A DNA stretch of 64,000 nt from positions 30,876,001 through 30,940,000 of the forward strand of contig OZ241833.1 of the NCBI GenBank assembly GCA_965202585.1, written 5' to 3'. Positions within the stretch are counted from its first letter, which is position 1, and every line of letters starts with the position of its first letter. Source of the stretch: Thalia democratica. Lineage: Eukaryota. The translations under genes and the position numbers were made by a program. The notes beneath the pieces are model-generated. The model made no database searches. It was not told the origin of the DNA and saw only the letters and a list, made by a program, of their open reading frames with translations. Shown piece after piece: positions 1 to 18,872 of the stretch.

Positions 1-2500
1 ACTAAAGTGACCTGTAAAAGCTTGTTGTAAAAATCAAAAGTAGTCAACTTTTGATTTATTTAATGTTAGTATTTTTAATTGATTGTTGTGTTTTTTTCAA
101 TGCGTAAAACTGTACAGGTTCGAACAGATTTATTTATAATCATTTTCAAAATTATTTTGCCTCAACTAGAGTTATTCAATCCGCTTAACTTTAATAAACA
201 AGTTATTCATGAGTTTTACAAAACTCACCGAGAGAGACTTGAGAACCGCTATGCTGGCAGCTCCGTCCTGCGATATGTAGTACCAGAAGTCCACGCACAA
301 GTCTTGGCTGCTGTCGGACACGATGGTCGGGCTCGTTATGATCGCCGTCTCGCCTCGCTGCATCTGGCTCGTTTCGAACACCATGTAGTACCCTGCGTTC
401 AAGTTGAAAGTTCAAGTTGATAGTGTTTGTATCAAGCAGTGTCGAATTGTATGAGTTATACGCACAAAGACGTAATACGTGTTTTGTTTAATTGAACTAA
501 AAACTTGAGTAGTATTTTACACGGTTGAGCTCAAAGAGTTTTGAAGTTTCTTCAAACGCTAAAAATCAAATGTTTTTAAATTAAATATCAACAATCGTTG
601 ACAAAACTGTTAATAATTAAAATAACACAGAGATTTAAAAACTTAAAAACTGTAACTACCTGAGCTTCCAGTTCCGTGGTCAGTACTGGGATCGTTGCTG
701 TTAGCAGCGGAAGCTCTGACCCAATCGTAATCGTCTCTCAACGTTGTGTGCGACCAAAAACACATGTCGTTCTCAAAATCGCAGGAAACTGTTTTTAATG
801 TTAAATGCGTCAGCATCACAAAATCTATCTATAGTATTAATTTGCACTTTATTGTTTTGTTTTATCAAAAACACTTCAACGGTAAGCGCTTTTATAAACT
901 ATAAAAGTTTTTTTTTACAACTTTAACTATCAAAGCTGTAGCTGAAAAAAGTTATACCTAGTAAATACTCTTGTGCAGGACACAACTGCCTTGGAGCCAA
1001 CCGACGTTTTTTTGAGCTTTTTTGAAACAAACTTAAAAAAATTCTCCTCAGCAAACTCACGCAGGTCTTTGCACGTGGCGTTGAGAATCGTCACGTCGTC
1101 GATGGCGATGTCCGAGTAGTAGGACGAGCCGACGGTGGCCTCGAACAGGACCGTGTACTTGTCCGCCCCTCCCAAGTTCACCGCCCCGAACTGCCACTCG
1201 TTGCCCTGGTCGCCGCTCAGCTCCCACTGATCGTACGTTACACTTCCCTGTTTGTTGAAAATTATTTATTAAAAATTTAATTTGTACTATAAAGTGTTAG
1301 TTGGTCACATCTAAAATCCCACTGATTGTATGTTACACTTCCCTGTATGTTAGAAATTTTTATAAAAATTACATTAATGCTATAATTAATGGTCGCCGCT
1401 CAACTCCCACTGGTCGTATGTTACACTTCACTATTGTATACTATTTTGTTTATGAAAAGTTGTTGATTGCAAAAAAATTATTTGTAGTATTTTACTTATG
1501 TTTTTTACTCAAACATGATTTAGCCCTTTTTTACTTTCAGTCAAAATTCTTTTTCTAGTTTCTACGTATGAGAGACTACATAGAATTAAATATTATATAA
1601 TCTACTTGGTAAATATTTTTATTTATACACGAAAGTCAAACACTAGCTTCAACAATTTGTTTAGAGTAATTATATGAACCACTTGACTTAACGTTGTTTT
1701 GAAAATTATATAGAAATTTTGATAAAAGCTGATAATAACTTTTATTTATGTGTACTCTTCACAAACATAAACTTCTTACATCTTTTTGCTGAACTTTAAG
1801 GGACCCGGTAGTACTACCGTACATGTGAAAATGGAATGTGAGGCAACTGTCCTTTTGTATGTCCCCTGTGATGGGAGGGGATTCCAATATTGCTCTCTCC
1901 CCGTAGTTGCTAGATGCCTCAACAAACACGTAGTAACCTGTGAAATAAAAGTAACAAAAAATTAAAAGATTATGTTTAGTTATGCCTTAACATGTGTAGT
2001 AAGGTTAGAAAATTTCAAAAAACTACTAACTTTGCAAGGTATTAAGTATTTTCGTTTTAAAAGTGAATTTTTTTTTTTTTTTTTTTCATTTCATTGTGAA
2101 AGGTTTACAAATTTATCCTTAGAACTTGGTAAATTCAAAAAACCGAAAAAATAAAGTTGTTTAGCTAAAAGATTACTAAAAAATTATATGTAAATAGTAT
2201 AGTCTAAAATACAGTAGAAAATAAAAAAGTTTTTATTTGTAATTTGAAATAATAATTTTTTTAGTTATACAATACTATTTCAAAGAAAAAACTTTTGTTA
2301 TAATCAAATACCTCTGGGAGTTTGATATGTGTGATCCGCGTAGGGACCCGTGTTCACTGAAGAGGTAAGTCCCTGCTGTCTCGTCCAATCAGTATCGTCG
2401 CTGAACACTTGCTGTTGCCATCCACACATACGGGGTAGTTCGAAATCACAGTTGTGGATGTCCTCTGTTGTTTAAAAGGTATGAAGCTTCAGATAGTTTG

Positions 2501-2541
<41 letters not shown>

Positions 2542-5500
2542 TAACTGGTTTACTAAGTCACGTTATTGTATGTTGTCTACTTGTTTATAAGACTTATAAA
2601 ATAGTTTTTTTATTACCGTTAAAGGCTGTATTATATAGTTTATTGAACGACAAAAAATATGCTCAAAATATTTGTTTCTAGGACCTGGTGCACAAAAAAC
2701 CTTTTGGTTATTGAGTCGCACACCACGGATACCTTTTAACGTCTTGTCCAGGACAATATTATATTAAGTCTTTATGTACCATTAAAGTGTAAAGTAAGAT
2801 TTTCGAAACCTTATAAACTTATGTACATCTTTTTGACGTATCTTAATCTAAAATTAACTGAAATCAAAATTGATCACTTTTTTTAAATATCACAACGTAA
2901 TACATTTATTTACAACTTGTCTTTTTGAACCGTCAGAAGCGAAAACTTTAAAGTTTTAGATGGGTGTTGTCTTCTTGCACTAAAGACAAACTATAAAACT
3001 GTTTTTTTTTGTATTATTTTTAACAACTTACCGGGCGGACAAACTCCATCAGTAAGTGTGATGTCGTCGATAGCAAAATCGCTTTGACCCTTTTTTCCTG
3101 GTGATGCGACAAAAGATATCTGTAAAAAAATAATTTGTTTCTATACACATCTTTTTTTTTTTAAACATTTACAGATAATTTTAAACTGAAAAAGCTTGGC
3201 AGATACTAAAACGGTAAAGTTTTTTTAAGGCTGAAATTTAGAAGGTATATATAGTTTATTGAATGACAAAAAAGTTCTCAGATTTGTTTGCTCCTAGGAT
3301 CTGGTGAACAAAGAAGCTTTCGGTTATCGAAATAAGGTAGTGCTTAAAAAGGAAAATTAAAAATAAAATAAAACCACTAGATTTTAACCTAGCTTACTTT
3401 CTAACTGTCAGTCAGACCTTATAACCTTATTAAAACTTCGTTACACAAGCGTCTAACAACCGACAGATACCAAAACTGCCCGAAACCCACCTGATAATCC
3501 ACGCTCGACGAAATGTCCACCACTGCCTTCTGCCACCCGCCCGACTGGCTGCCCCTGCGGTCCCACTGCGGGTCCACAAAGTCCGGCCTGGTCCGCACGT
3601 AGACCTCCAGCTTGCCCTGGCTGAAACCGGTCATGTAGTACCAGAAGGTCAGGCACCTGTCTGAAGATTTTCCGTCCAGCGGAGTCGGAACTACCGGACC
3701 GAGCAGCACAGCCTGGTCCCCGTCTGTATATTGTGTTTATTTTTCTTTAAATTTCAAATTATAATTTTTTTTTTAATTTTACGAAAGTAGTAGTTTTATG
3801 TTCTTGGTATAGATTTTGTTTTATCCACTTGTGTATGTTTTTGTCAATACTTTTATATGCTGTACTTTTATTAAAACATTTTATATTTTTGCATGTTTTC
3901 TCCGACTGTATAAAAGATTTAAGTTTTATTTAGAGTTGCAAATGTTGTTTAAACCTCTGTATTTTTAATTTCAATAAGTTTGTTTTTAATTACATAATTT
4001 ACAGGCATCTTGGAGCGGAGTGTTCATAGATTATATAAGTGTACTCTGTTTCTCGACCACCCATATATTTAAAACTTTCTAAAAACTTTTGTACTAACAA
4101 AGCCCTAATTAAGGTAAAGCCTCTTTCAACTGTAATCCTTTTTAGAAATGGTTCATTGACTAGACTTTTATCCTAAAACGTGTAAAATGCTTAAGATTTT
4201 TTGTTTTACTAAAAGCACTTAACCAAACTAGTTTGATTTTACCAGCACAGATTGGTTTGCTTAAAAAAATTATCTGCTAGGTGTCAACAAAGAGCCTGTA
4301 CGTTAAACAACTCTCGATTATTTGTTATTTGTTTGCTTTAGTTATTGTTCCGCTGCATCATTGTGTTTGTGATTACTTTATTTCTATATGCTCTGTCCAT
4401 AACTGATTTTCAAACACAATACATACACATGTATAAACACAACACGATTCTGGCTGATACTGTTAGGCCTGTTGCTTATATGTTGAATATAAGCAGACAA
4501 ATACTAAAACTTGTTTCGGTTTTTGCCCCACAAAACAGTATTTTTTATCTTTCTTTATACTTTAACATCATTTATAACAATCAAGTTGAGTTTTAGAGTC
4601 TGTGTTATATTCTAATTTTTTTACAAACAACGCAAAACTCACCGTTGCGCTGAAGAAAGTCGAAGTTTTACACTGTTCACAAAGTCGGAAAAAATAATTA
4701 TAATATTAAGAGTTTTAGTTAAACACAAGCAATACGAAACCAACCGTTGTACTGAAGGGAGTCGACGTAGGCGAAGCTTCCCGATCCAGAAGTGTGATCC
4801 CTGTCTGGTCCCGTGTTCACGTTGGAAGTCTGACTCCTGTAAAAAAAAGATCAGTTTTATTCATGTTGATGTGTTGAGAAGACTTTTTATATACTGCTTG
4901 TTTGTTTTATGTATGCCTACAGTTCTTCTTAATTCCACTTGACATTTACCAGTTCTTTAATCAATTTTTTTTTTGTTACAACGAAGAATGGTTGTTTCGT
5001 TAGTTTGTTATATTTCTACAATTTTGTTTTTTACTTCAAACTTTTATCTTATAATTTTTTATTCATAAACTTCTTACAGCTTTTAACGTCTCACTTTTCT
5101 CTTACCGGGTTTTCAAAAAACAAACATACATAATACTTTTTTCAAACAAAGATCTAAATCTACTCTTTAAGTTTTGAAAATTTCAACAAAAAGTTACATA
5201 TTTGGTAAATATCACTTTTCATTTAGAACTCTATTGAATAAAATTTGTTTTTAATATTTCTAAAACAATGAATCATAGAATTTTCAATAAGCTAATACAA
5301 AAATAAAAAACGAACTTGGTCCAGGACATGGGGTAGGATGGGTCGTTGTACCAGTTGCAAAGGTCCCCGTCGAAACTGCAATCGGAAGTCCCGGTTGTTA
5401 TGGGCGGAATGGGTTTGTCTGGGGCCGCGGTCGTCATAGGCTGGTTGCTAGGTTGCGCGTTTTGCGGGTTCACTTTGCAGTATGACGTCACAAAACCGAT

Positions 5501-8500
5501 GTCGTCGAGTGCCAGCATTGCTGAAAGTTTTGAAAAATTGCACTTTAAAAAACAGAGTGTAAAGCAAGTGAGCTTGCATAACTTCGTGCTAACAAAATTA
5601 AATAGGACACTGGAAGCATTAAACAATGAAGTTTAAAGTTCCTAGTTGTAAAAAATAACCTGTTTTTTAAGCTTCAGCATCTGCTGCTTAAATATTTTTA
5701 CTAAACTAAAGCGCTAAGTACTAAATGGTGCATATTCCAGCTTTATTTGTTTTAAGTGATACATTTAAAACAAACATTGTTTAATTTAATGCTAAACCAA
5801 ACTGATATCATAAACTGTATATCACTAATTCGGTAACACTAGTACTCGAAAAAAAGGTTTACTAGTATTTACTTTTAGCAGTTATTTTGAATATTTTCAC
5901 TAATTACAACTCACTACTGCCACTAGTGCCCGCCACAGCCTCGAATATAATGGTCCTGGTGTAAGAGCTCTGAATAGGGGCTGTACCTTCAACCCAGTTC
6001 GAACCCTGGTCCCCACTCAACGTCCATATCAAGTACCTGTGCATTGTTTAAATGATAGTTTTCATATGATTTACTTTTACTTTGCACTAAAAGTGGTTTT
6101 TAAAAAAAAAAACTTTTTACAGTTTGATAAAAGGCAAAACAACTTGTATTTAAAAGTTTAAAAAAAACTAAAAACTATTTTAGTTTTTAACAAAAAGTTA
6201 TATACGAGCAAGTGGAAACTATTATTTACAAACAACCCTAAGTTTAGTTGTTTTGTAATTAATTCACTACGGTTTTATCGAGAGTTTGAAAAACAAACAT
6301 TCTTAAAATCTCAATGCACTGACGCAAGACTAAACAGTCAACCGACAAATTTTAACATTCAAAACGTTTAATTTTTCTTAGTTTTAGTTTCATCAACAAC
6401 TAACTTGTCCCCGTACAAATTGTCCATCAGCCACACGTTCAAGGTGGCGTCCCCGGTCAAGTAGTACTTGAAAGCCACGCACGAGGGACTGGGGGTGGGC
6501 GGAATGGTCTCGCTGGTCCACAGCGCGCTGTCCCCATACAACCTTCCAACCATATTGGCATTCAAGTATGAACCTGGTGTTTATTTCATAGTTCAAATTA
6601 GTACAACTTTGAGTTGCTTGGTTTGCATTGACAAAGTTTTCTTGTAAAACTAAAAAGAAACACGGACGTAAAATAAAACTTATCTTGTAAGGTAACTACG
6701 TTTAGACACAGCCATTTGCTCAACTTAAAAGTTTTTGTTTCATATTGTTTGATTATAAAATTAGAATAAGTATACAACTTAAAGTTTAAATCAAAAGCTT
6801 AAAGAAGTAGAGTATGTGTAACTGTTTTTTTTTACATTCGAAACAAAAAGGTATGCATAGACAGTTATAGAAACTTTTTTTGTGAAGCAACTTAAGAAGT
6901 TTAACGTCAGGTATCTTACAAATAAAAGCAAAGCTTCATATAAACAAACTCCTTTATGCTTCATTTAATTTAAAATATTTAAGATTATTTTACATAAAAA
7001 AACGTAGAGACTACAAAACATATTGTGACGTCACAATCCGTATTTACCTTGACTGGTTCCCGAAGTACCGTCCACTGGAGGACCGTTGACCTCATTGGCG
7101 TACTTGGCTTGCTGTTCCGACCAATCAAAATCGTCGCTGACCAAGTTTCCCCACACACATGGCTCCGCGTGCTCGAAGTCGCAAAGCTGCGATAACAATT
7201 GATAACGAATTGATAATTGAAGTGAAAATGCTTTGAATATCATAAAATTCTAGGTTTTGTTACGACTGTAAAGTTGGTGCTTTGTTAGTTTGTTTTTAAA
7301 GTCTTACGTTCACTTAATTAGTAACATATCAATAGAGTATGATTTTTTTATAAATGAAAAGCATGTTTTGTTAAACAATGACAGCTTTAAAATTAATATT
7401 TATTTTTATTTTGAACTGTCAAAAATTTCGAAAACAAGGTATAATTCTAAAATTTAAAAGTCAAGTTAGCTTTTGATAAATTAAAAAAGTTTTTGGTGCT
7501 GGTGTTTTTTACCTCATTGCACGGTCCGTTGAGCAGGGTGAGGTCGTCGATGGCAATGTCTCCATAGTAGCTGGAACCCTTAGTCGCCTCGATGGACAGC
7601 TGGTAGTTGGTGTTGGTCGAAATGGTCGCCTGTCCGAGCATCCATTTATTGCCCTGGTTCCCACTTCGCGTCCAAATCGTCTGACCTTTTAAGTGTTATG
7701 AATTTTGATTTATACGATCTATCTGTTGCACCTTTTGTTTTATAATATTTAAAGTTTATTGCCTCGCAAACAACCTGGCCTTCAAACTAATTTGTACGTT
7801 ATTACGAAAATTACAGTTGCTTGAGTGTAGTTGTGGCTACATGCGTTTTCAAATGTAATTATCAAAAGCTTTATATACAAGAATGCTAATTTATAAATTA
7901 TTTTAAATAGTTTTATATGTCTATTATTGGAATAACTAGCAGAAAGTTTAATAAAAACTGAAAAAAAAAATATTTTTAATCAATAAACAAGGTAAAAGCT
8001 ATGAAACCTGTTATTCAGTGTCGAGTGTCATTGCTTTTGTACCAATGATAAAGTTTTCGTTAGTAATAAACTGTCAATTAGGGGCTGCACATTTTTTTAT
8101 CAACTAAAACCCTCAACAGTTTTTAATAAGACTTTGTTGCAGTATGTCCAAAATAAAATCAAAATGAAACAATTAATTCATTTAATCATTAACTTGTGAT
8201 AACTGGCAGTGGGGTTTTAATAGTTTGAATTATCATTTTAGTTTTAACTAACTTAATACATGCTTAACTTTTCTATTTACGAATTTTGTAATCAACTGCA
8301 AACACTTTAATAACAACTTGCATTGAAACAGCGTGAAACATGAGAAAACAGCGCTAACTTACATAAAGTTTACAATGTTTCAACTTTTTTGAAATCATCA
8401 AAATACTTAAAAATAAAACTAGATACAGCTTACCATTAAAAGTTGAGAAAAATATAGTCCAAACTTAAAACAAGTACTTCGGATAACGACTTACTGATGG

Positions 8501-11500
8501 TGGGGCCGCTGTTGAGAACGACCCTCAAAGTTCCAACGGTGCTTCCGTACATGTGGTACCAAAACTGGAAACATTGGGACTTTCCGTTCCCTGTCGCATT
8601 GAACTTCGGTGATGTTAACGCTGCAACGTCGTTTACAGCCTGGAAAAAGATATTTTGCTGTGAAATTATTGGACTAATAGACTTGCGTGGTTTTATAAAC
8701 ACTCTTAAGCCAACACGTTTTATAACTGATACCAGCTAAAGCTTTGTTTGTGATGTGCGTTTTTTGGGTAAAGTGAAAAATATCAAAAGATTTTTAACAA
8801 TTTGTAAGACTGTTTTTGAAGCAAATAAAACAGCTAGGAAATATAAAGCACAAGCTTTCACGGTACAGAACCAAGCATACTATTGTTTTGGATTTTGTGT
8901 TTTTCTATCAAATGTCTAAACTTTTGAAGTCAGTGTTCAAAACACGCCAGAATTTAGGTTTTAAAAAGTTATAAAAACCTTGTATTAAATAATAGTATAA
9001 GAAATACCAACATTCTGGCTGGTCTCGATGTACAAGTAGTGTCCGAGCTCGGTCTGGTAGGTGTGGTCGTTGGGGGGACCGGTATTCGTTGACGACGAGT
9101 CCCCGTAGTTACGCTCCCAGTCGAAGTCGTCGCTAGGGGACGCTACCTGCTCCCATCCGCACAACCCCAAGTCCTCAAAGGTGCAGCGGTGCGGGCCCTG
9201 GAAAAATTTGGGTGAAATTTCTCGAGAAACTTCATAAGTTACTAAACTGTGTTTTTGCGAGAACACTACCCCGTTTTGGATGGCAGCAATAAATTTTTAC
9301 TGCTGTTTTGCACACGCAAACGCCATTAAAGGTTTTCAATCAACTTTGGCACAATCTAAATGTTGTTAATGTATTGAAAGTATACATAAAGTTTAAACTT
9401 GCAGCAAAAAAACTTGTATTGATTAATTTTTTAGCGCATGCATAAAGTTTAAAGTACATTTTTCAACCTTTTAGAAATATAGTTACAGTGCACTTTAAAC
9501 TCACCGACGCGCAAGCTCCTTTCGTCATGGAAACGTCGTCAATGGCGACGTCGCCCTGGTCGCCCACGTTGTATACTGCTTCTATGCCGATCCTGAACGG
9601 GGCCACTGCCGCAACGTCAATCTGTGTTCGTGTGGTTCAGTGTTTAAATGTGCAGTTTACTGTTTACTATTGCTTGTTGAACGACAAAAAAGCGAGCAAA
9701 CTATTTGGTCTGGTCATTTGATAAATTTTATAGATTTTTGCTCAGTTCAACAACGCTTTGGCTTTTATCCAGTGTAAGAAAGTTGTCAAGCAGTTAATTG
9801 CAGCTAAACTTAACAAGTTTACAAACTTGGTACTGGAAAATAAACACGGCAGAACTGAAACTTTTCAAGTTATTTTGAAAGCTTCAAAAAACGTACATCT
9901 GCCAGTTACAACTTTAAAGTCACTGAGTTAACAATTTGTAAGTAAACTTTTTTTAAAGCTTAATTCAAGTTTCAAAAACTACAATGTTTTTAAGATTTAC
10001 AACCAAACCTCTGCCAGCTGCCAGAACCGGGACTGGGTGCCGAACCTGGACCACTGGGCCTGGAGCATGGTGTAGGTCGGCGAGCTGTACACGTTCAGGG
10101 AATCGATGTTGGAGCCCAGCATGTGGTACCAGAACCTCAGGCACTGAGGCGCTGTTGAGAGGAAAAGTAAATAAGTAGGTGAAGTTGTTAAGAAAACGTG
10201 TGAGACTTGTTGATCAAACCCGGACGTGATTTTGGGTTTAAGTCGGTATTTTCATTTTTGTTTGATGCTTTTTAACCTCGCTATACTTAAACACATTTTA
10301 AATTTGAAATGTAATAACTAGTCCTAGATTTTAGTTTTTTTTTATGTCAGACTAGAGTTTTTTTTTTTTACAAGACTTTTTTTATGATATATATAGTTCT
10401 TTGATTTAGAAATTCCAATGAACTAAGTAAAAGTTTTATAGTTTTCTTACATTCAGTAACGATTTAAAATCATTTCAGTGTTATTTATTTAACCAACAAA
10501 GCAAAACAATTCAAAACCTAACAAATAGTCTTACTTAAAATTTTCACTAAATCAACACAATACGTCATAACTTTTTCAAACCAATACTAAATGTCTACAT
10601 TACAACCATAATATATAAAATCAGAAATTCATAACAATTTTAAAAACTTTTAATTAAAGCGCGTTCAAAATGTTCTTCTAATCTTTTCAGACCCCACCGA
10701 CAAATCGATTCAGTTCGAAACCAAAAGCGCCTTAAACTTACGTCATCAGACTGAAAATGCGTCATAACTTTTGTGACGCATCAAAACAATCGAAACAACC
10801 AACTTGGTATCTCGTTGTCGTCGAGGAAGGGGCTGACGGGCGGGCTCCAAATGACGGAGTTGCTGCCGTCCTCGTACGCCTGCGACCCGCTGACGTAAGC
10901 GTAGTTGCCGCCGGTGCAGTTGACGCGGAACCCCGAATTGTGCTCCGCCTCCGGAACCTCCACGTTATAAGCGTCGGTCCTGAATTGTTAGTAAAATATT
11001 CAAATAAAGAGCGTTACGTTTGGTGGAACACAAGCTTCTTAGGCTGCACAGTTGTTTTTATTGCTAAATACAGACTGTGTGTTGGCGAAAGGTGCGTGGA
11101 GCGTTTTACTTCAGTTTTAGGGGTTTGATTGTACAAATTTTTGAGGACGTTTTAAAAGAAAGGAGGTTCATTGTTTTTTTAATGATAAAGGTTCTTTTTT
11201 ACAAACTAAAGATCAACTAACAGCTTTTAGAAGCTTTACGTCAAATATTCAATTGCACAGCCTTTTTTTTACTGTTTTCTTTATTTTTACATCGTTCAAA
11301 CATTAGCATTCAATTTGTTAAAACGTTCAAACACCTTCCGATGCAAGCTCCCGCGTACGGTCCGTTCGAAGGGTCCATCGTGTGGTAGGTGTAAGCGGCG
11401 CAGTTCGGTTGTAGGGCGCATTCCAGCTCGCATTTGTACTCCTCCGACTCGTCGAACCTGATCAAGTTTAAAAGTAAGTTGTTTGTATGTTGATACTAAT

Positions 11501-14500
11501 TTGCTAAGTTTTTAAAAGAGTTCTCAACTTATACAAGCAGCAGGATTTTGCTTTCAAGTACTTTTCAACTTTGACAAGGTTTTAAATGAAAAAGTGCTTG
11601 TAAACTTATGTTACTTTTTTATCATTGTTAACATGAATGTTTAATTTTGGGTTGAAAATTAATTCAAGTTTGTATGCAACAGAAAACATTTAATTAAGTA
11701 GCACAAATTTATGAAAAATAAAATTTCTTCGGGTATTTAGTAAATATTTAAACACAGCTCAAAGAAAAAATGTTCAAGTTTATCCAAATTAATATTGTTT
11801 TTTTTTCAATTTTTTTTTTTAATGTAGTTAGCCCGTTAAACGAGGCTTGTTGTAAAATTAAATGATATGAGTTTAAAGTTTAGAAAATAAACAGTTTTGT
11901 TTTTGAATCTTATAACTTTTTATCGCGCACTTGTATAATGTTTTCTGTCAGAGCTAAAATTGAGCAGAACTACTTTTGTATACAAAATTAATTTTTAAAC
12001 TAAATATTATGTCATAATAATGTTTTATGTAACATTTGTAAAGACTTTTTATTTTTTAGAAAATTGTACAGTTTACCGTAAAACAAATACACATTCACAT
12101 GAGTAAACAGTACTAAAAAAATAAACCAAAGCTTTTTGGTATTTCATTAGTGGTAATTTTATTTTTTTGGTTATTTAAATCAGTACAAAGGTACAAATTT
12201 ACACAAGTACAATTTACATGGTAGTAATCATGCAGGTTATTAATTAAACAGGGTTTTTGTTTGAACGTCTATTAGCAGTGTAAACAAACAAATTTGATTT
12301 CAAATCGTGCGCTGATATTTGCTATGAACTTGAAATATTAATCATTCAGGAATTTTGCTATTTGTTTTCAAATTTAATTCAAAGCAATAATTTTGTACTT
12401 TTCTTTTATTTTTAGAACTAATTGTTGGTTATTAAATTAAAACGTTTTCATGAAATTTAATACAAAACAAGGGCTAAGTTGTAAATTATTTGCACTTGAT
12501 TTTGAAAGTTTCAATATGAAAAAAAACCCTAAATGATTAGCAGCAAATAAGCTTATCCCAAAATTAAAAGCTTACTACATTTAAATCGATTAAACTTAAA
12601 AGTAAAATGTAATCACTATCGATCGAAAGAGTCTTAAAATTATAAAACAGTTTTATAAAGTCTAATTTAGTCAAAACACACTTTTAAAAGGCCTGAACAA
12701 ACATGAGTTTTGAATTTTGATAAAACAACTGTAGCACAAAAACTTACATCACAATTTTTAAACATGAAAAGTTTTAAACTAATGCTGTGGAAATCTACTG
12801 TCACAAAACAAACTCACTAGCGACAAACTTACTACTTATAAACAAAAAAAACAAAACCCATTTCAAACCACAAATGACAAACTTGATGTCTTATACTAAA
12901 CTAGTAAACCTTGCTGCTTACAGCCAAATTAGCGACAAAGATACTGCTCAAAAAAAGACTAACGACAAACTTACTGCTTACAAACCAACCAGCCACAAAC
13001 CCAACGTCTTGTTTTAAACAAACTAACGACAAACTTACGTTCCGAACAAAAACAGGTCGGGGTCCGTGTCGTCCGTGGGAGAGGTGGGCAACCCCCAAAC
13101 TGCGTTCATATCTGGCACACGATCGAAGCATGCGTCTGGTTTTAAAATAGTTTGTTTAGCTTTGTTTTTTAAGTTGAAAAAGGCTACTACATATCTGTTG
13201 ATTCGTATAAAACTTTAGCACTAATCGAAAGCAAGCTTATTTGCATACTCGAGTTAAGTGATAATTTAAAATGATACTTTTTTACAATTTTATTTCAATT
13301 TTTCAATTGTTTTTATTCTTGTTTTTTAAGTTTGGAAGGTAAATCGAAATCTTCTGAAGATTTTTAATTTACTTTGCGACATTACATCGCACATAAAGTT
13401 ATATTGAACAATTTCAACTTACTGCCGTTGGTGTGATCGTTCTCGGGACCGGTATGTTCTGCCTGAGTGCTTCCAGAGTTCAACGACCAATCAAAAACGT
13501 CGTTCTTCTCGGTATTCGCCCATCCGCACAACCCGTCCTCAAAGTCACAGTCGAACGGACCAAGGTTATCTGGAGTAGTAAAATAAATTGTTTTACGATA
13601 CTTTAGTTATTTGTATTTTAACTTGGCTTTATAATTTTTCAAAAAATAACGTCTAAGTACATTTAGTTTAAGCGTTAGCACGTTTTTTCTTACCTTCGAA
13701 ACATTTTTAAAACAGGTCTGTGTGAATTTACTTGAAGTTTTTTTTTTCTTTTATTTTGTTTTAATTTTAGCCTGGTTTTTTTTATCTATTTATCGCTTTT
13801 CATGTTAAAAAGCTAATTCTACAGAACTTGTTTTCACCTGTTTTCTTTTTATTCTTGTGTGTTCCAATTTTAATAAGTAAGTGTTTTATTAATCAAAAAC
13901 GAGAAATTGCTCAAAATTTTTCGGTTCAAAGACCTAGATACGCAAAAATACCTCTCGGTCTTTGATAAAAGGTTGTACATGCAGCTAAAAAGCCTAAAAG
14001 TCAATAACATTCGAAGAACTCACTGCTCTCCTTGAAGAAGCTGGCGTCCTTCTTGAATACGTCAGTGCCGTCGTCCTGGTCAATTCTCAGCCTGTAGTTC
14101 ATGTGCCTGATGAAGTGTCCCGGATAATTTGAAGACTCGTACGCGGTGTAGTCCTGTTTGATGAACAATAGTGTTTGAAAAAAAAATTGTTTTGTTTAAA
14201 AACAATCAAAGTTTTAAAATATTCATAAGATTAATTTGTATCTAGACCTAACTTTGTACCAAAATACTTTTGTAAAATTAAAGTACACATGGTAAATGTG
14301 AATTAAACTAAACATTAAACTGCATTTTTGCACAAAAACATGCTAAATTTCAAAAACATGAACGATAAAAAAGTTTGTTTTCTGTTCAAAATCTTGAAAC
14401 TTAAACGTTTTTTCTCAAGCAGTATCCACTGAAACTTTATCTTATTAACCAACCGGGTAGTACTTGTCCTCTCTTAGGTAGTAGCTGGCATCCTTCTTGT

Positions 14501-17500
14501 ACAAATCACTCTCCTCCAACGGGTCCAAATACAGCAAGTAGTTGTAGTGGCGCGCGAAAAAGCCCGGGAAAGTTTCGGACTCGAACGAGACGGTGCCTTC
14601 CTCACCGCTGATACCAGGTGTTAACAGGAGGAATCTTGAGAAATAAAAAAAGGTTAGATATAGTAGTATTAACTTTATTAGTTGTTATAGTATGGTTCTT
14701 AGTGCTAAGAAGAATAAAGTTAATGCTTAAATCTTGCGATTCATATAACAATAAAAACAATTATTAACTAGAAGAGTCTAGATAAAGTGTGTTTCGATTT
14801 TATAGTTAGTAAAAATAAAACTAGTTGACTATACTTTTATCAGTAAATTGCTTACTTTCGTGTTCTATCTAGTAATACTACCATTTATCTAAGCTAAAAC
14901 TTTTTGCCAGCTATATTTTTTAACAGTCACAAGTCATACGCTAAAGATATTTTGCTAAAAAAGTACTAAAAACTTTTATTTTTTAGTACAAACAATTTTG
15001 CTTGATACACTTGAAACCAAATGAAAACCTGTGGGGGTTCTGGTCGACTAGGACCATGTCCGAGTTGTTGACGATCCCGAAGGAGTAAGTCGGAAGGTTG
15101 TACGACTGGAATATGTGGGGTCCGGTTCTCTCTACAATGGCGTAGATGGGCGATCCTGTTTGCAATTAAATATGCTGAAACATGTTCTTAATTTAGAACA
15201 TAAATGTTAAAGATCTTAGTAGCACTTAAAGGTCTTCGTAATCAGATACAGTAGTTTTACTTAAATTAAGCATTTTTTGTCTACTTTTTATTCTTAAGCG
15301 ATAAACTTAAAATGTAAATCTTGGATCAAGTGTTTATTAAGTTTTTGTTTTACATAATTTGGTAATTAAACGTATCAATTGTTAAATTACTACATGTCAA
15401 GGTACAATATGTTTTTTGGCGCACCTATACAAAACTTCTTTTCAAAAACTATGTCGTCCAAAGCAATCGAACCGAGGATTCCCCTTTCCATGGAAATAGC
15501 GATCTCAATCTGTAAAAACATTTAATTTCTACTTTGTTTCTTAGTTAATATGTGTTATTTAGGTCATAAATGTTACGTACTTGAACTCTTTTTTTTTCAC
15601 TTAAAAGATTTTCTTATATTGCAAAAAAATATATAATTAATGTAAGATAAAAATAAAGTGTAAAGTAGGAAAATTATAGACCTGCTAAGAAAAATACTTG
15701 AAGTTGTCTGTAGCAAAATATATTCAAAGCTCAACTTTTTTAAGAAAATTTTAAGTTAGACAAAACAAAATATTTCCTACAAAATATCACTCACCATAAA
15801 ATATTTTAAGTTTAAAAAATTAAAATGAAAATACTTCCGAATTTGTATACATACCACTTACCCTGAACTTTTCAGCGATAGGATTAAAAAACGAAGTATT
15901 TTATTAACTAAGCTTTATCCTAGGTCTACATATACCTCATTTTTAGGTTTGAAAAAACAAACAACATATTCTACAATCAACATTATACGACTCACCCTGA
16001 AACTGGAGTTGCTGCTGATGCTGACGGCTCCTGGGAACCACTGATCCCCGTAGTTCTTTCTGAGCGACCACAGTTCCAAGGGTCTTCCCCTTCCCCCGTC
16101 GAAGTCGTCCATCGACCAATAGTAAACCGTCAAGCTTCCGATGTCCACTCCGCTCATGTACCACCTGGCGGTTAAAAATTATTTGTATAAATTTATTTTA
16201 TAAAAGTACAGCGTGTACTTAACTTTAAATGAGATACTTGTTTGTCTTACGTAAATTATGTGCTAAAAAAACAGTGTGTCTAAAACTAGGTAAGCTTTTT
16301 TGTTTTAAATATGTTTTTTTTTTGGTTTTTAAACGCATTTGAGGTCTTCAACTTGTAAGAGCTTTTTTTTCTTAAAATTAGCAAGCTTAACGTTTTTGGA
16401 ACCAAAAATATTTATAAATGTTAGTTACACGCTGTACAGACCAAAGTTAATCAAATGACAAAAAGTATTCTTACCTCCGGGTAAAATGTAATTATGTTTT
16501 TAAATGTTTAAAATATAGGCAAATCTAAACTTTCCATACTTTGCATTAAATCATAGTTATTTTATAATTAAAAAGTTCCTACGTATTTTACAATTTAATT
16601 TTACTCACCAGAAACTCAAACAGTAATCCTCGTTAACCCCGGAGTCGATGTAAACAATTGATGACGTCAGTCTGGATACGTCATCGGGATCTGTGAAGTC
16701 TGGAGAGGCTAGCAGAAATTTTCCTGAAAATTATATATATTTAATAGTCATTCGTTATAAGTTATGGTAAAGTCTTATACTAATTTGTATATTTCAAAGA
16801 ATTCTTACATTTACATCTTCAATGCTTTCAAAATTTTTTAGTAGAGGCTCACAAACATTTTCAACTTGTACGCTTTCTACTATTGTGCACATTTTATATT
16901 TAATAAAAAACGTAGTTGATTTTGTTTACAATTTTTCAAGTTTTTTTACAGAATTTCTAAATATTCAACTGCACGTTGTAATTTTTATATAAATTTTACA
17001 TGTTCTGCGAAATTCAACCTGTAGTCGTTTTGTTGTGATCGTAGGCAGGTCCCTGTGTGGAGTTCATCTTGATGAAATCTGCATTAACCCACCACAAGTC
17101 GAAATCAGAACCCATCCCGCCTTTCCAATCACAATAGTCCGTCTCGAAGTCACAGGTGGCTGTTGTACATAACAATTTTTTTTATTAGACGCTTGGTAAA
17201 TTAAAGCTTCTTTTATCTAAGCCGTAAATAAATTCTTTTTTATGCGGCTGACCTTACTGTCTGAAATTTTCGAGCTTGAAATTAAGTTATGTTCAACTTA
17301 TTTTTATCATGAGTTAAAGACGATGACTTTCTCAACAAAGTTACTTTTTAAAGCAAAACACGCTTGACAAGCAAAATTCATATTTACGAATTTCAAAACC
17401 AGAAATACTTTAAACTTTAAATAACTTTAAACTTACCTTGCTGACAGCCTCCCTGGGACAGGATGACGTCATCGATGGCGATGTTGCCTTTCTGGCCCTT

Positions 17501-18872
17501 CACCCCCTCTATTATGACGTCATAACTGCCGGACTGCATCGCGGGAACGTTTATTTTGGCGGGATACCAGTAGTCCCCCTGGTCCTTTGCGAGCCTCCAC
17601 ACGGGAGTCGAGGGAAGAGGGGATCCGGTTGATCTCACGTACACGTTCAGTTCTCCTGTTACGTAGGAAATAATATTGAAAAGTTTATATGCAGTAAGCC
17701 AAGTATTGATAAAAACACAAAGGTCATATTTATTGGTTCAATTTCTTGTTACGACGTCACAAACCGAGGCTTATGCCGGTGGCGTAGTACCAGAAGGTGG
17801 CGCAATTCTCCCCACTTCCCGCCGGTGAGGAGAAAGTGATCCGCGCTCTGTCGCCCTCTGAAACCACGCTCCCCTCCGTGTACAGGTAGTTTCCTGCGAT
17901 GATATGTAATAAATTTTAATGAATATATTTAAATTAATAGATTTTCAAATAGGTTTTATTACCAATATTTTCAATTTGCTTATAAAATAGTTTCTAATTC
18001 ACGATTAAAACTTTTTTTAAACATTTTTCAACTTCGCTGCTAATAGTTCTACTTTGTTTTTAAAAACAGCCGTTTTTGTTTTTGCATTAATTTTTTCCAT
18101 TCACTACGCAAATTTTATAAACACGCCTGAGGTCAGCATATTAAACGTGTTAAGTTAAATTTCGTCAAAGCAACAACGTTTAAACAAACGATATCTTAAT
18201 TTAAGCAATACAAATACTAACCGCTAGTGTCACCCTTCGTGTGGTCAAAGGTCGGACCGCTGCTGGAGGTACCGGCCGCCCCTGAAGTTCTCAACCAATC
18301 AAAGTCGTCCGAAGGGTCCTGAGTGTTGCAGCCGGTGGTCTGGTCCTCGAAGGTGCATTTCAGTGCTGAATAAATTATCAAGTTTTAAAAGTGGTTTTGA
18401 AAAACAAAAACTAATGACAAATGGGTTTAAATATTTCGTTTCTTAATTAAACGTTTTAGTGCGTTTGTTAAATCAATAGTTTAAAGCTCTAGTTGTACTA
18501 TAATACTAAAGGTTACAAATATGATATAAAGATGATTTAACAACAAATGTTAGTCGTTTACGCAAAAGCGTCTTAAATATATTTAAGTTTTTTTGAATGA
18601 CTTTGAATTAAAGTGCTATATAAACTAAATTAAGTAAGCTTTGAATTTTTTATTAGCTTTTTTATTTAACTTAGTTTTAAAGGCTTTCATACTATTTAAG
18701 AAGAGATAACGTTCCTGACGATAACGATGGTTAAAAGGTTTAAAATACTTATTTTAATAAAACACTAGTAATACAACTTTCAGTTATATTTTACATTTTT
18801 ACACTTACTGTATTGTGAGAATGCATGAGGAGTTATTAATAAAACTATACAAGTGAACTTAAAAGTCCACAT
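1..18872 (-). CDS. Large secreted multi-MAM-domain protein (signal peptide - MAM1 - MAM2 - AbfB/CBM42 - MAM3 with inserted PAN/apple - MAM4 to MAM8...), 3' end runs off the window
   Basis: Phase-consistent GT-AG exon chain (top-bottom): 18872-18809 (MWTFKFTCIVLLITPHAFSQY, signal-peptide-like), 18365-18222, 17893-17765, 17655-17437, 17159-17019, 16723-16609, 16164-15996, 15509-15425, 15155-15029, 14634-14454, 14153-14024, 13569-13423, 13135-13039, 11457-11335, 10979-10804, 10151-10009, 9621-9505, 9197-9012, 8639-8495, 7685-7513, 7186-7048, 6573-6405, 6036-5915, 5520-5316, 4836-4745, 3723-3491, 3119-3032, 2464-2312, 1937-1780, 1247-1061, 788-660, 392-229, and an exon starting at 11. The first 32 exons sum to 4650 nt (1550 codons) with no stop. 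MAM hallmarks recur eight times: CxFE..C.W, DFDW, GP..DHT, CL.FWY.M.G, W...G.QG..W, IAIDD(I/V)....G.C. No LDLa repeats were seen, so no MALRD1 symbol is assigned. Confidence 0.9.
2500..2536. repeat. (TA)n microsatellite
   Basis: Uninterrupted TA run in a MAM-gene intron. A second, interrupted TA tract lies at about 54731-54770. Confidence 0.9.
2633..2760 (-). repeat. Dispersed short repeat resembling a 5'-truncated retroposon 3' end
   Basis: Related copies at about 3246-3335, 9673-9713, 19551-19675, 29858-29885 (weak), 31315-31436 (opposite strand) and 31543-31620. All share the end TTTTGTCGTTCAATAAAC or a close variant. Confidence 0.7.
10900..13135 (-). CDS. PAN/apple-like module inserted within MAM3 of the MAM gene
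   Basis: Exons 13135-13039, 11457-11335 and the first part of 10979-10804 read NACFDRVPDMNAVWG...FDESEEYKCELECALQPNCAAYTYH...YAGACIGRTD...HNSGFRVNC. This is the C...C...C.....C.AYTY...C...SG..C cysteine pattern of PAN/apple domains. Confidence 0.65.
14024..15155 (-). CDS. AbfB / CBM42 (alpha-L-arabinofuranosidase B carbohydrate-binding beta-trefoil) domain exons of the MAM gene
   Basis: Three exons translate to GSPIYAIVERTGPHIFQSYNLPTYSFGIVNNSDMVLVDQNPHR / FLLLTPGISGEEGTVSFESETFPGFFARHYNYLLYLDPLEESDLYKKDASYYLREDKYYP / DYTAYESSNYPGHFIRHMNYRLRIDQDDGTDVFKKDASFFKES. The repeated ES..(F/Y)PG.F.RH.N..L......(F/Y)..DAS(F/Y) motif is the CBM42 subdomain signature, recognised by eye. Confidence 0.82.

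What the first reader, a model, noticed from the sequence alone, without database searches (positions are those of the whole stretch)
14024..15155. Arabinofuranose-binding-type CBM42 (AbfB) domain inside a secreted MAM array
Seen in sequence: three symmetric-phase (1-1) exons place an AbfB trefoil between MAM2 and MAM3. Subdomains 2 and 3 keep the RH...DAS motif while subdomain 1 lacks it. Established: in fungal AbfB the His and Asp of the beta and gamma pockets bind arabinofuranose, and in animals the domain is best known from otogelin and otogelin-like. Inference: an exon-shuffled multivalent lectin or adhesion scaffold, possibly a mucus or matrix component recognising algal, plant or microbial glycans. 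I know of no characterised MAM-AbfB-PAN protein.
Basis: partly seen in the sequence, partly recalled or inferred. Interest (0 to 1): 0.7.

Follow-up and report, generated by a model that had tools for sequence, protein, structure and literature searches.

The report
Sugar-binding CBM42 module inside MAM array
A pelagic tunicate gene that encodes a long chain of MAM adhesion domains also carries, in frame between the second and third MAM, one complete CBM42/AbfB sugar-binding module that keeps two intact binding pockets; the module is real and is conserved in a second species, but it is a new combination of familiar parts, not a new kind of system.

Summary
On the minus strand, three GT-AG exons (15155-15029, 14634-14454, 14153-14024; 438 nt) encode one complete CBM42/AbfB beta-trefoil. 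Exons 2 and 3 alone score 42 and 50 bits against Pfam PF05270. The spliced domain scores 170 bits against an HMM of 53 related units. It joins in frame, through phase-1 introns, to the last exon of MAM2 and the first exon of MAM3, inside a stop-free 682-codon reading from a signal-peptide-like start.

The same MAM2-AbfB-MAM3-PAN order is found in a second organism (contig L013). Amino-acid identity there is 52% and synonymous sites are saturated.

The beta and gamma pockets keep the His/Tyr/Asp residues that hold arabinose in solved CBM42 structures. The alpha pocket is degenerate, as in most relatives.

The module groups with tunicate stand-alone AbfB-repeat proteins and shares their exon plan, which points to exon shuffling.

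This scan had already noted a 13-module AbfB gene elsewhere in this genome (s1-279073).

Two things could not be tested. No RNA run is available, so splicing is unconfirmed. No search of annotated proteomes for the domain architecture could be completed.

Verdict: a new variant of known kinds, of moderate interest.

The parts
18809..18872 (-). Putative first coding exon: ATG followed by a signal-peptide-like sequence (MWTFKFTCIVLLITPHAFS|Q), ending in a phase-1 donor.
   Evidence: A scan for Met followed by a hydrophobic stretch found it. It splices in frame to the first MAM1 exon through GTAAGT...AG. No signal-peptide predictor was available, so this is a heuristic reading only.
17437..18365 (-). 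MAM1, three exons (18365-18222, 17893-17765, 17655-17437).
   Evidence: Pfam MAM: 26.1 bits (profile positions 1-40), 20 bits (42-83) and 45.5 bits (86-158). All junctions are GT-AG.
15425..17159 (-). MAM2, four exons (17159-17019, 16723-16609, 16164-15996, 15509-15425). It ends ...IALDDIVFEKKFC with a phase-1 donor.
   Evidence: Pfam MAM scores 17.7 bits on the third exon. MAM start and end motifs are present. Orthologous exons are found in L013.
15029..15155 (-). AbfB exon 1, alpha subdomain (127 nt). It enters in phase 1 and leaves in phase 2. The pocket residues are absent.
   Evidence: Local HMM: 16.7 bits at positions 7-37, against a maximum of 4.4 bits for shuffles. It is 40% identical to L013. 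Both variants seen here in the DNA contigs are synonymous.
14454..14634 (-). AbfB exon 2, beta subdomain (181 nt). It leaves in phase 0. The His/Tyr/Asp triad is intact (ARHYNY...KKDAS).
   Evidence: Pfam AbfB 42 bits. Matches to solved structures: 9FNK 3e-15, 3KMV 6e-15. It is 60% identical to L013. In L013 the alpha and beta parts lie in one exon, which confirms the join NPHR|FLLLTPG.
14024..14153 (-). AbfB exon 3, gamma subdomain (130 nt). It leaves in phase 1 at a GTGAGT donor. The His/Tyr/Asp triad is intact (IRHMNY...KKDAS).
   Evidence: Pfam AbfB 50 bits. Matches to solved structures: 3KMV 4e-21, 3AKF 1e-20, 1WD3 6e-8. It is 58% identical to L013.
13423..13569 (-). First exon of MAM3 (phase-1 acceptor; ...FDCDFEDGLCGW...DHTNG).
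   Evidence: Pfam MAM 34.9 bits, profile positions 1-41. The junction 14024|13569 keeps the frame. The L013 counterpart lies at 4909-5052.
11335..13135 (-). Two PAN/apple-like exons (13135-13039 and 11457-11335) inserted after the first exon of MAM3.
   Evidence: PAN_4 scores 19.6 bits on the second exon, below the cut-off of 27. Both exons are conserved and collinear in L013. They are in frame in the gene model.
1..10979 (-). The rest of MAM3, MAM4 to MAM7 and the first part of MAM8. The array runs off the left end of the window.
   Evidence: Pfam MAM matches on 17 of 20 further exon-sized open frames. Some junctions in this stretch were not curated.

Best explanation
The three exons encode one complete CBM42/AbfB beta-trefoil. 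It is an integral, in-frame module of a very large tunicate MAM-array glycoprotein that probably enters the secretory pathway. The order is signal peptide, MAM1, MAM2, AbfB, MAM3 (with a PAN-like insert), then many more MAMs.

The module most likely entered a phase-1 intron between two MAM modules by exon shuffling from the tunicate family of stand-alone AbfB-repeat proteins.

Its likely function is a lectin unit with two working pockets, beta and gamma. These pockets would bind terminal furanoside sugars of the alpha-L-arabinofuranose type, and possibly the look-alike beta-D-galactofuranose. That would tether such glycans to a scaffold of MAM domains, a domain type that in other proteins mediates adhesion and oligomerisation.

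Shown: domain identity, the exon structure, frame continuity, conservation in a second species, intact ligand residues, and kinship with tunicate AbfB units.

Inferred: the splicing, the secretion, the direction of the shuffling, the sugar binding and its specificity, and any biological role.
For: - Domain identity. Pfam AbfB scores 42 and 50 bits on single exons. The spliced domain scores 170 bits over HMM positions 7-139 of 143, with the three exons mapping to alpha, beta and gamma in order. Solved CBM42 chains match single exons at up to 4e-21. An embedding search also returns AbfB.
- Frame continuity. A stop-free reading of 682 codons runs through 15 GT-AG exons from the ATG at 18872 across MAM2|AbfB|MAM3. 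The module boundaries are phase 1.
- No independent start. AbfB exon 1 has an in-frame stop three codons upstream of its acceptor, and no Met before residue 33.
- Second species. Contig L013 has the same order of MAM2, AbfB, the first MAM3 exon and PAN, with the same boundary phases. Amino-acid identity is 52%, pN is 0.35 and pS is 0.91, which is saturated.
- Ligand residues. In AtAbf43C, H70, Y73 and D89 hydrogen-bond arabinose in the beta pocket, and the alpha pocket is inactive (PMC12493170). The aligned His, Tyr and Asp are present in both the beta and gamma subdomains of the window and of L013.
- Origin. The window domain, the L013 domain and the four units of a Clavelina lepadiformis AbfB protein form a clade with 98/88 support. 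Units of this genome's AbfB-repeat gene have the same plan as L013's module: phase 1, alpha+beta exon, phase 0 after the ..K(Y/F)(Y/F)P motif, gamma exon, phase 1.
- Present-day constraint. Variants in DNA contigs are 9 intronic and 6 exonic, and 5 of the 6 exonic ones are synonymous.
Against: - No RNA data exist for this organism. Inclusion of the three exons in the mature message is therefore inferred only from frames, splice sites and conservation.
- The module is 438 nt and symmetric, so it could be skipped without breaking the frame.
- No 3D model of the spliced domain could be made with these tools.
- No animal AbfB domain has a demonstrated ligand in the literature I could search. His and Asp at these positions are kept in about 47-49 of 53 related units, so their presence may partly reflect family-wide structural conservation.
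- The organism behind L013 is unknown.
- The 3' end of the gene, and therefore whether the protein is secreted or membrane-anchored, was not found.
Confidence: 0.65

Rival explanations
1. The module is a real, expressed part of the protein, but it is not a sugar binder. It serves as a structural spacer or a protein-binding trefoil, which may also be the case for the uncharacterised AbfB domain of otogelin.
For: - No animal AbfB domain has a demonstrated ligand in the searched literature.
- The His/Asp motif is a family-wide feature, present in about 90% of 53 related units, so keeping it is weak evidence of function.
- A bacterial galactofuranosidase works equally well without its AbfB domain (PMC4560423).
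Against: - All six pocket residues (His, Tyr and Asp in each of the beta and gamma pockets) are kept in two species whose synonymous sites are saturated.
- Where relatives have lost a pocket, these same positions do change. Examples are the alpha subdomains generally and the gamma subdomain of this genome's array gene, which reads INH...KKNSS.
- Arabinose occupies exactly these pockets in solved CBM42 structures.
Confidence: 0.2
2. The three exons are a facultative cassette, or belong to an alternative transcript (for example a short isoform that ends just after the AbfB exons). Most MAM-array protein would then lack the module.
For: - The module is symmetric (phase 1-1, 438 nt), so skipping it keeps the frame.
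- Reading through the donors gives stops 11 codons after MAM2 and 8 codons after exon 3.
- No RNA data are available to exclude this.
Against: - The module, its boundary phases and its position are conserved in a second, distant species.
- The donor after exon 3 is a perfect GTGAGT, and the acceptors have good pyrimidine tracts.
- Exon 1 cannot start a protein on its own.
Confidence: 0.12
3. The feature is a chance match, an assembly chimera or a decaying pseudo-exon set.
For: Only that exon 1 has no Pfam hit of its own, and that the sequencing runs available may come from the same sample as the assembly.
Against: - E-values are 1e-10 to 1e-21 on single exons.
- There is no stop or frameshift in 682 codons.
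- Overlapping DNA contigs from public runs tile exons and introns, with no joints reported.
- Exonic variants are mostly synonymous.
- An orthologous copy exists in another organism.
Confidence: 0.02

Closest known systems
CBM42 modules of microbial arabinofuranosidases (AtAbf43C 9NXH/9NXI, C. thermocellum 3KMV, SaAraf43A 3AKF-3AKI, A. kawachii AbfB 1WD3)
   Same: Same Pfam family (PF05270), with the same three-subdomain trefoil plan. The same His/Tyr/Asp ligand residues are present in the beta and gamma pockets. The alpha pocket is degenerate, as in AtAbf43C.
   Different: The window's module is not attached to any glycoside hydrolase. It is encoded by spliced animal exons and sits inside a chain of MAM domains. 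Its ligand is untested.
Stand-alone AbfB-repeat proteins of animals (Clavelina lepadiformis CAK8691440/XP_076806765, Hydractinia XP_057315235, Lingula XP_013413771; this genome's arrays at C1:23.57 Mb, C1:72.93 Mb and C10:22.75 Mb; earlier scan note s1-279073)
   Same: These are the closest sequence relatives. The window module falls in one clade with the Clavelina units (98/88 support). The unit exon plan and intron phases are identical.
   Different: Those proteins are made only of tandem AbfB units. Here a single unit is embedded between MAM domains. The window copy has also gained an extra phase-2 intron between alpha and beta.
Otogelin and otogelin-like (vertebrate ECM proteins characterised by an AbfB domain)
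   Same: An animal extracellular multidomain protein that carries one AbfB domain of unknown ligand (PMC4948705, PMC4224354).
   Different: Otogelins are VWD-C8-TIL mucin-type proteins. No VWD, C8 or TIL match appeared in any of the 38 exon-sized open frames of this gene and its extension scanned with Pfam. The window domain's nearest relatives are tunicate AbfB repeats. No otogelin sequence was compared directly.
MAM and LDL-receptor class A domain proteins (MALRD1 / MAMDC4 type)
   Same: A long tandem MAM array on one strand. LDLa modules are interspersed in the distal part.
   Different: Known members, as I recall them, have about 6-9 MAMs, are membrane-anchored and have no AbfB or PAN domain. 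Here there are about 49 MAM end-motifs over roughly 112 kb. The first LDLa lies 34 kb beyond the window. Whether this is one gene or several is unknown, and no transmembrane segment was found.

Membership tests
CBM42 / AbfB domain (Pfam PF05270) | Sequence match above the curated Pfam cut-off | tested here: met
   42 bits (exon 2) and 50 bits (exon 3) against a cut-off of 22.8. The spliced domain scores 170 bits against an HMM of 53 related units.
CBM42 / AbfB domain (Pfam PF05270) | Three tandem subdomains of about 45 residues (alpha, beta, gamma) forming one beta-trefoil | tested here: inconclusive
   Met at the sequence level: exons 1, 2 and 3 map to HMM positions 7-37, 42-100 and 101-139 in order.
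CBM42 / AbfB domain (Pfam PF05270) | His, Tyr/aromatic and Asp ligand residues in at least the beta and gamma pockets | tested here: met
   The residues align with H70, Y73 and D89 of AtAbf43C (PMC12493170; alignments). [quoted passage not shown]
CBM42 / AbfB domain (Pfam PF05270) | Binding of arabinofuranosyl residues | not testable with these tools
   Needs the recombinant domain and glycan arrays or calorimetry.
MAM domain array (Pfam PF00629) | MAM domains directly flanking the module, in the same frame | tested here: met
   Pfam MAM matches on the flanking exons. The reading frame is continuous across both junctions.
PAN/apple domain | Match above the Pfam cut-off with the PAN cysteine pattern | tested here: inconclusive
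   PAN_4 19.6 bits (cut-off 27), PAN_2 14.8 bits and PAN_1 14.2 bits, on one exon only. The two exons could not be scored together. They are conserved in L013.
Otogelin / otogelin-like | VWD-C8-TIL units together with AbfB | tested here: not met
   Pfam gave only MAM, AbfB, weak PAN and LDLa in the exon-sized open frames scanned.
MALRD1 / MAMDC4-type MAM-LDLa proteins | Alternating MAM and LDLa modules in one polypeptide with a C-terminal membrane anchor | tested here: inconclusive
   An LDLa module scores 40.5 bits at 34 kb beyond the window, and six further DCxDxSDE motifs lie downstream. Whether they are in the same transcript is unknown. No transmembrane segment was found.

The most novel reading that the evidence does not exclude
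The protein is a giant secreted MAM-array component of the mucous feeding net, or of another extracellular matrix, of a pelagic tunicate. Its CBM42 module would be a working furanoside lectin that captures or recognises algal or microbial arabinofuranose- or galactofuranose-bearing glycans. That would make it the first animal CBM42 with a defined ligand and a role in particle capture or microbe recognition.
Probability: 0.12. Interest if true: 0.6.

Novelty: new variant of a known kind. Interest (0 to 1): 0.35.

Why it matters
In the literature I could search, animal AbfB/CBM42 domains have no known ligand or function. This includes the one in the deafness-linked proteins otogelin and otogelin-like. 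This locus offers three things:

- A clean, conserved case in which a single AbfB unit with two canonical arabinose-type pockets has been placed into an adhesion-domain scaffold. The likely source family is still present in the same genome with the same exon plan, so it is a well-documented example of exon shuffling.
- A small domain of about 146 residues that could be expressed to test what animal CBM42 modules bind.
- A pointer to a lineage-specific expansion of AbfB lectin-like genes in tunicates.

It does not reveal a new mechanism.

Tried and rejected
- RNA evidence. The look-up of sequencing runs found only two DNA-type runs from one study. Read laying showed genomic unitigs with no splice joints. 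Splicing therefore could not be tested.
- Architecture search for MAM+AbfB proteins.
  - The search of protein representatives with exon 2 gave 1301 hits. None of the nine long or animal-like ones I scanned with Pfam had MAM. They were bacterial hydrolase or protease fusions, one AbfB plus C-type lectin (P0127), and P0049 with AbfB only.
  - The search for homologous proteins with P0002 returned mostly bacterial proteins, plus one AbfB+PAN protein, P0263.
  - The same tool with exon 2 found no candidate, and with a Clavelina unit found only itself. The tool's length window prevents reaching very long proteins.
  - The metagenome scan was blank.
  - These blanks are not evidence that the architecture is absent elsewhere.
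- Literature. Searches for AbfB with MAM, lectin, ascidian or metazoa found no characterised MAM-AbfB protein. The accession of the L013 run appears in no paper.
- Introner hypothesis for the extra alpha|beta intron: rejected, because the intron is single-copy in the genome.
- A splice acceptor 27 nt inside exon 2 (first exon base 14607): rejected, because L013 reads straight through the equivalent FFLVSPGIKG stretch.
- Acceptor at 15131 for exon 1: rejected, because conservation with L013 extends up to 15155.
Folding a proxy relative was judged uninformative.
- A search for a transmembrane segment or the gene's end over 120 kb found nothing convincing.
Full report
WHAT IS THERE

The window is AT-rich animal DNA. 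Earlier notes of this scan call the genome a pelagic tunicate; I did not test that. The gene lies on the minus strand.

Translating the three GC-richer blocks inside 14024-15155 gives peptides with the hallmarks of the AbfB/CBM42 family. With canonical splice sites the exons are:
- 15155-15029 (127 nt);
- 14634-14454 (181 nt);
- 14153-14024 (130 nt).

Together they make 438 nt, or 146 codons.

IS IT MORE THAN CHANCE

- Pfam PF05270 scores 42 bits (E 1.3e-10) on exon 2 alone and 50 bits (E 4e-13) on exon 3 alone, against a cut-off of 22.8 bits.
- Single exons match solved CBM42 chains at E-values down to 4e-21: 3KMV, 3AKF, 9NXI, 9FNK and 1WD3.
- An embedding search also returns AbfB clusters.
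- Exon 1 has no Pfam hit on its own. I built a local HMM from 53 full-length related units, excluding this locus. The spliced domain scores 170 bits as one domain over positions 7-139 of 143. Exon 1 alone scores 16.7 bits at positions 7-37, while the best of 200 shuffles scored 4.4. Exons 2 and 3 map to positions 42-100 and 101-139.

The three exons therefore encode the alpha, beta and gamma subdomains of one complete trefoil, in order.

THE GENE AROUND IT

Exon-sized open frames on the same strand are MAM by Pfam, on both sides of the module.

Choosing GT-AG sites that keep the frame gives a stop-free reading of 682 codons through 15 exons. The order is:
- an ATG at 18872 followed by a signal-peptide-like stretch;
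- MAM1 (three exons);
- MAM2 (four exons);
- the AbfB module;
- the first exon of MAM3;
- two PAN-like exons;
- the rest of MAM3.

MAM2 ends at its terminal cysteine, and MAM3 starts at its CDFE..CGW motif, so the trefoil sits exactly between two complete domains. The introns at MAM1|MAM2, MAM2|AbfB and AbfB|MAM3 are all phase 1.

Only the module as a whole is 1-1. Its internal introns are phase 2 and phase 0.

AbfB exon 1 cannot start a protein. An in-frame stop lies three codons upstream of its acceptor, and there is no Met before residue 33.

The PAN call is weak. PAN_4 scores 19.6 bits against a cut-off of 27, on one exon only.

The array runs far beyond the window. There are 8 MAM domains in the window. 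About 41 more MAM end-motifs lie on the same strand over the next 94 kb, against 1 on the opposite strand. There are also 7 LDLa-type motifs, one of which Pfam confirms at 40.5 bits. I could not tell whether this is one gene or several, and I found no membrane anchor.

A SECOND SPECIES

An 80-residue ORF fragment, P0149, is 59% identical to exon 2. It lies on a 6.5-kb contig assembled from another public run (L013). The organism is unknown.

That contig carries the following, in the same order and on the same strand:
- the end of MAM1;
- the MAM2 exons;
- AbfB (55.8 and 40.4 bits);
- the first MAM3 exon;
- both PAN-like exons.

The module boundaries have the same phases: 1, then 0 after the ..YY(P/D) motif, then 1. 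The alpha and beta subdomains are in one exon there, which confirms my exon 1|2 join.

The two AbfB modules are 52% identical over 145 codons. pN is 0.35 and pS is 0.91, so synonymous sites are saturated. This indicates long divergence under purifying selection.

In this genome, exon 2 is the stretch most similar to L013 (60%). The array genes reach 41-45% over most of the query, and up to 55% only over short pieces. This supports orthology.

DNA contigs from public runs tile exons and introns without joints. They carry 9 intronic and 6 exonic variants, and 5 of the 6 exonic ones are synonymous.

POCKETS

In the arabinose complex of AtAbf43C, the sugar in the beta pocket is hydrogen-bonded by H70, Y73 and D89. 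The gamma pocket is also occupied, and the alpha pocket is inactive (PMC12493170). PMC2518083 reports arabinose binding by the fungal CBM42 and the residues involved.

In the HMMER alignments these three residues correspond to the His of RH, the Tyr three residues later, and the Asp of DAS/DAT.

- The window has all three in the beta subdomain (ARHYNY...KKDAS) and in the gamma subdomain (IRHMNY...KKDAS).
- L013 has them too.
- The alpha subdomain has Ile and Asn at the His and Tyr positions.

Across 53 related units the beta and gamma His and Asp are present in 47-49 units. The alpha 'His' position is hydrophobic in most. The beta/gamma-only pattern is therefore the family norm, not a peculiarity of this copy.

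WHERE THE MODULE CAME FROM

- The nearest full-length relatives are units of Clavelina lepadiformis (tunicate) AbfB-only proteins, followed by Hydractinia and Lingula proteins.
- In a maximum-likelihood tree, the window, L013 and the four Clavelina units form a clade with 98/88 support. That clade sits inside a well-supported clade of 39 animal-type rows.
- This genome has at least 94 exon-level AbfB matches in about five other places. One was noted earlier in this scan as a 13-module gene (s1-279073).
- In the array at C1:23.57 Mb, each unit has the same plan as L013's module: a phase-1 acceptor, an alpha+beta exon, a phase-0 intron after ..NKYFP, a gamma exon, and a phase-1 donor.

A two-exon, phase 1-1 AbfB cassette dropped into a phase-1 intron of a MAM array is therefore the simplest history. 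The direction of transfer is an inference.

The window's extra alpha|beta intron is absent from L013 and from the array genes. It is single-copy in the genome, so it is not an introner family.

HOW IT MOST LIKELY WORKS

MAM domains are extracellular adhesion and oligomerisation modules (established knowledge of meprin, RPTPmu and zonadhesin). CBM42 binds non-reducing arabinofuranosyl side chains through its beta and gamma pockets. Enzymes that carry this module often also act on galactofuranosides (PMC4560423).

I therefore read the protein as a large extracellular MAM scaffold with one bivalent furanoside-lectin unit near its N-terminus. The ligand, the tissue and the role (feeding mucus, tunic matrix or microbe recognition) are all untested.

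COMPARISON AND NOVELTY

- Membership in PF05270 and PF00629 is met.
- It is not an otogelin. No VWD, C8 or TIL was found, and its nearest relatives are tunicate AbfB repeats.
- Resemblance to MALRD1/MAMDC4 is limited to the MAM array and the distant LDLa modules.
- I found no paper describing a MAM-AbfB protein.
- I could not run a proper architecture search. The protein tools either returned bacterial fusions or were blocked by length limits.

The finding is a new arrangement of known modules, backed by good evolutionary evidence, and of moderate interest.

Noticed in passing
window 1-18872 (minus strand), continuing in L014-L025 (G000:C9:30756001-30876000): The MAM array is enormous. There are 8 MAM domains in the window and about 41 more MAM end-motifs (xIDDV) on the same strand over the next 94 kb, against 1 on the other strand. 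Seven LDLa-type motifs appear from 34 kb onward. Whether this is one gene or several tandem genes is unknown, and no membrane anchor was found.
   Followed up: partly
window 14635-15028: The phase-2 intron between the alpha and beta subdomains is absent from the orthologous module in L013 and from the AbfB units of this genome's array genes. It is therefore probably a lineage-specific intron gain. It is single-copy in the genome, so it is not an introner-type element.
   Followed up: yes
G000:C1:23569453-23588834, C1:72931621-72938567, C10:22741845-22759226, C668:12595-34935, C1093:1133-15861: There are at least 94 exon-level AbfB matches outside the window, arranged in dense tandem arrays. 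The C668 and C1093 arrays score almost the same as the C1:23.57 Mb and C10 arrays, and so look like alternative haplotigs or recent duplicates. In the C1:23.57 Mb units the gamma pocket is degenerate (INH...KKNSS), unlike in the MAM-embedded copy.
   Followed up: partly
window 13039-13135 and 11335-11457; L013 5958-6065 and 6118-6192: The PAN-like pair of exons inserted after the first exon of MAM3 (the subject of scan note s1-292080) is conserved and collinear in the second species. There the intron between the two exons is only about 50 nt, against 1.6 kb here.
   Followed up: partly
P0263 (569 aa), P0127 (350 aa): Other non-enzymatic AbfB architectures exist in public data: two PAN domains plus AbfB (P0263, source organism not named), and AbfB plus a C-type lectin domain (P0127, from a metagenome and animal-like).
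   Followed up: partly
G000:C9:27892869-27893153: An isolated AbfB-like stretch with three in-frame stops lies 3 Mb from the window on the same chromosome-scale contig. It may be a decayed copy.
   Followed up: no
window 15156-15424: The public DNA contigs show nine variant positions in this 269-nt intron. That suggests high heterozygosity in the sequenced sample.
   Followed up: no
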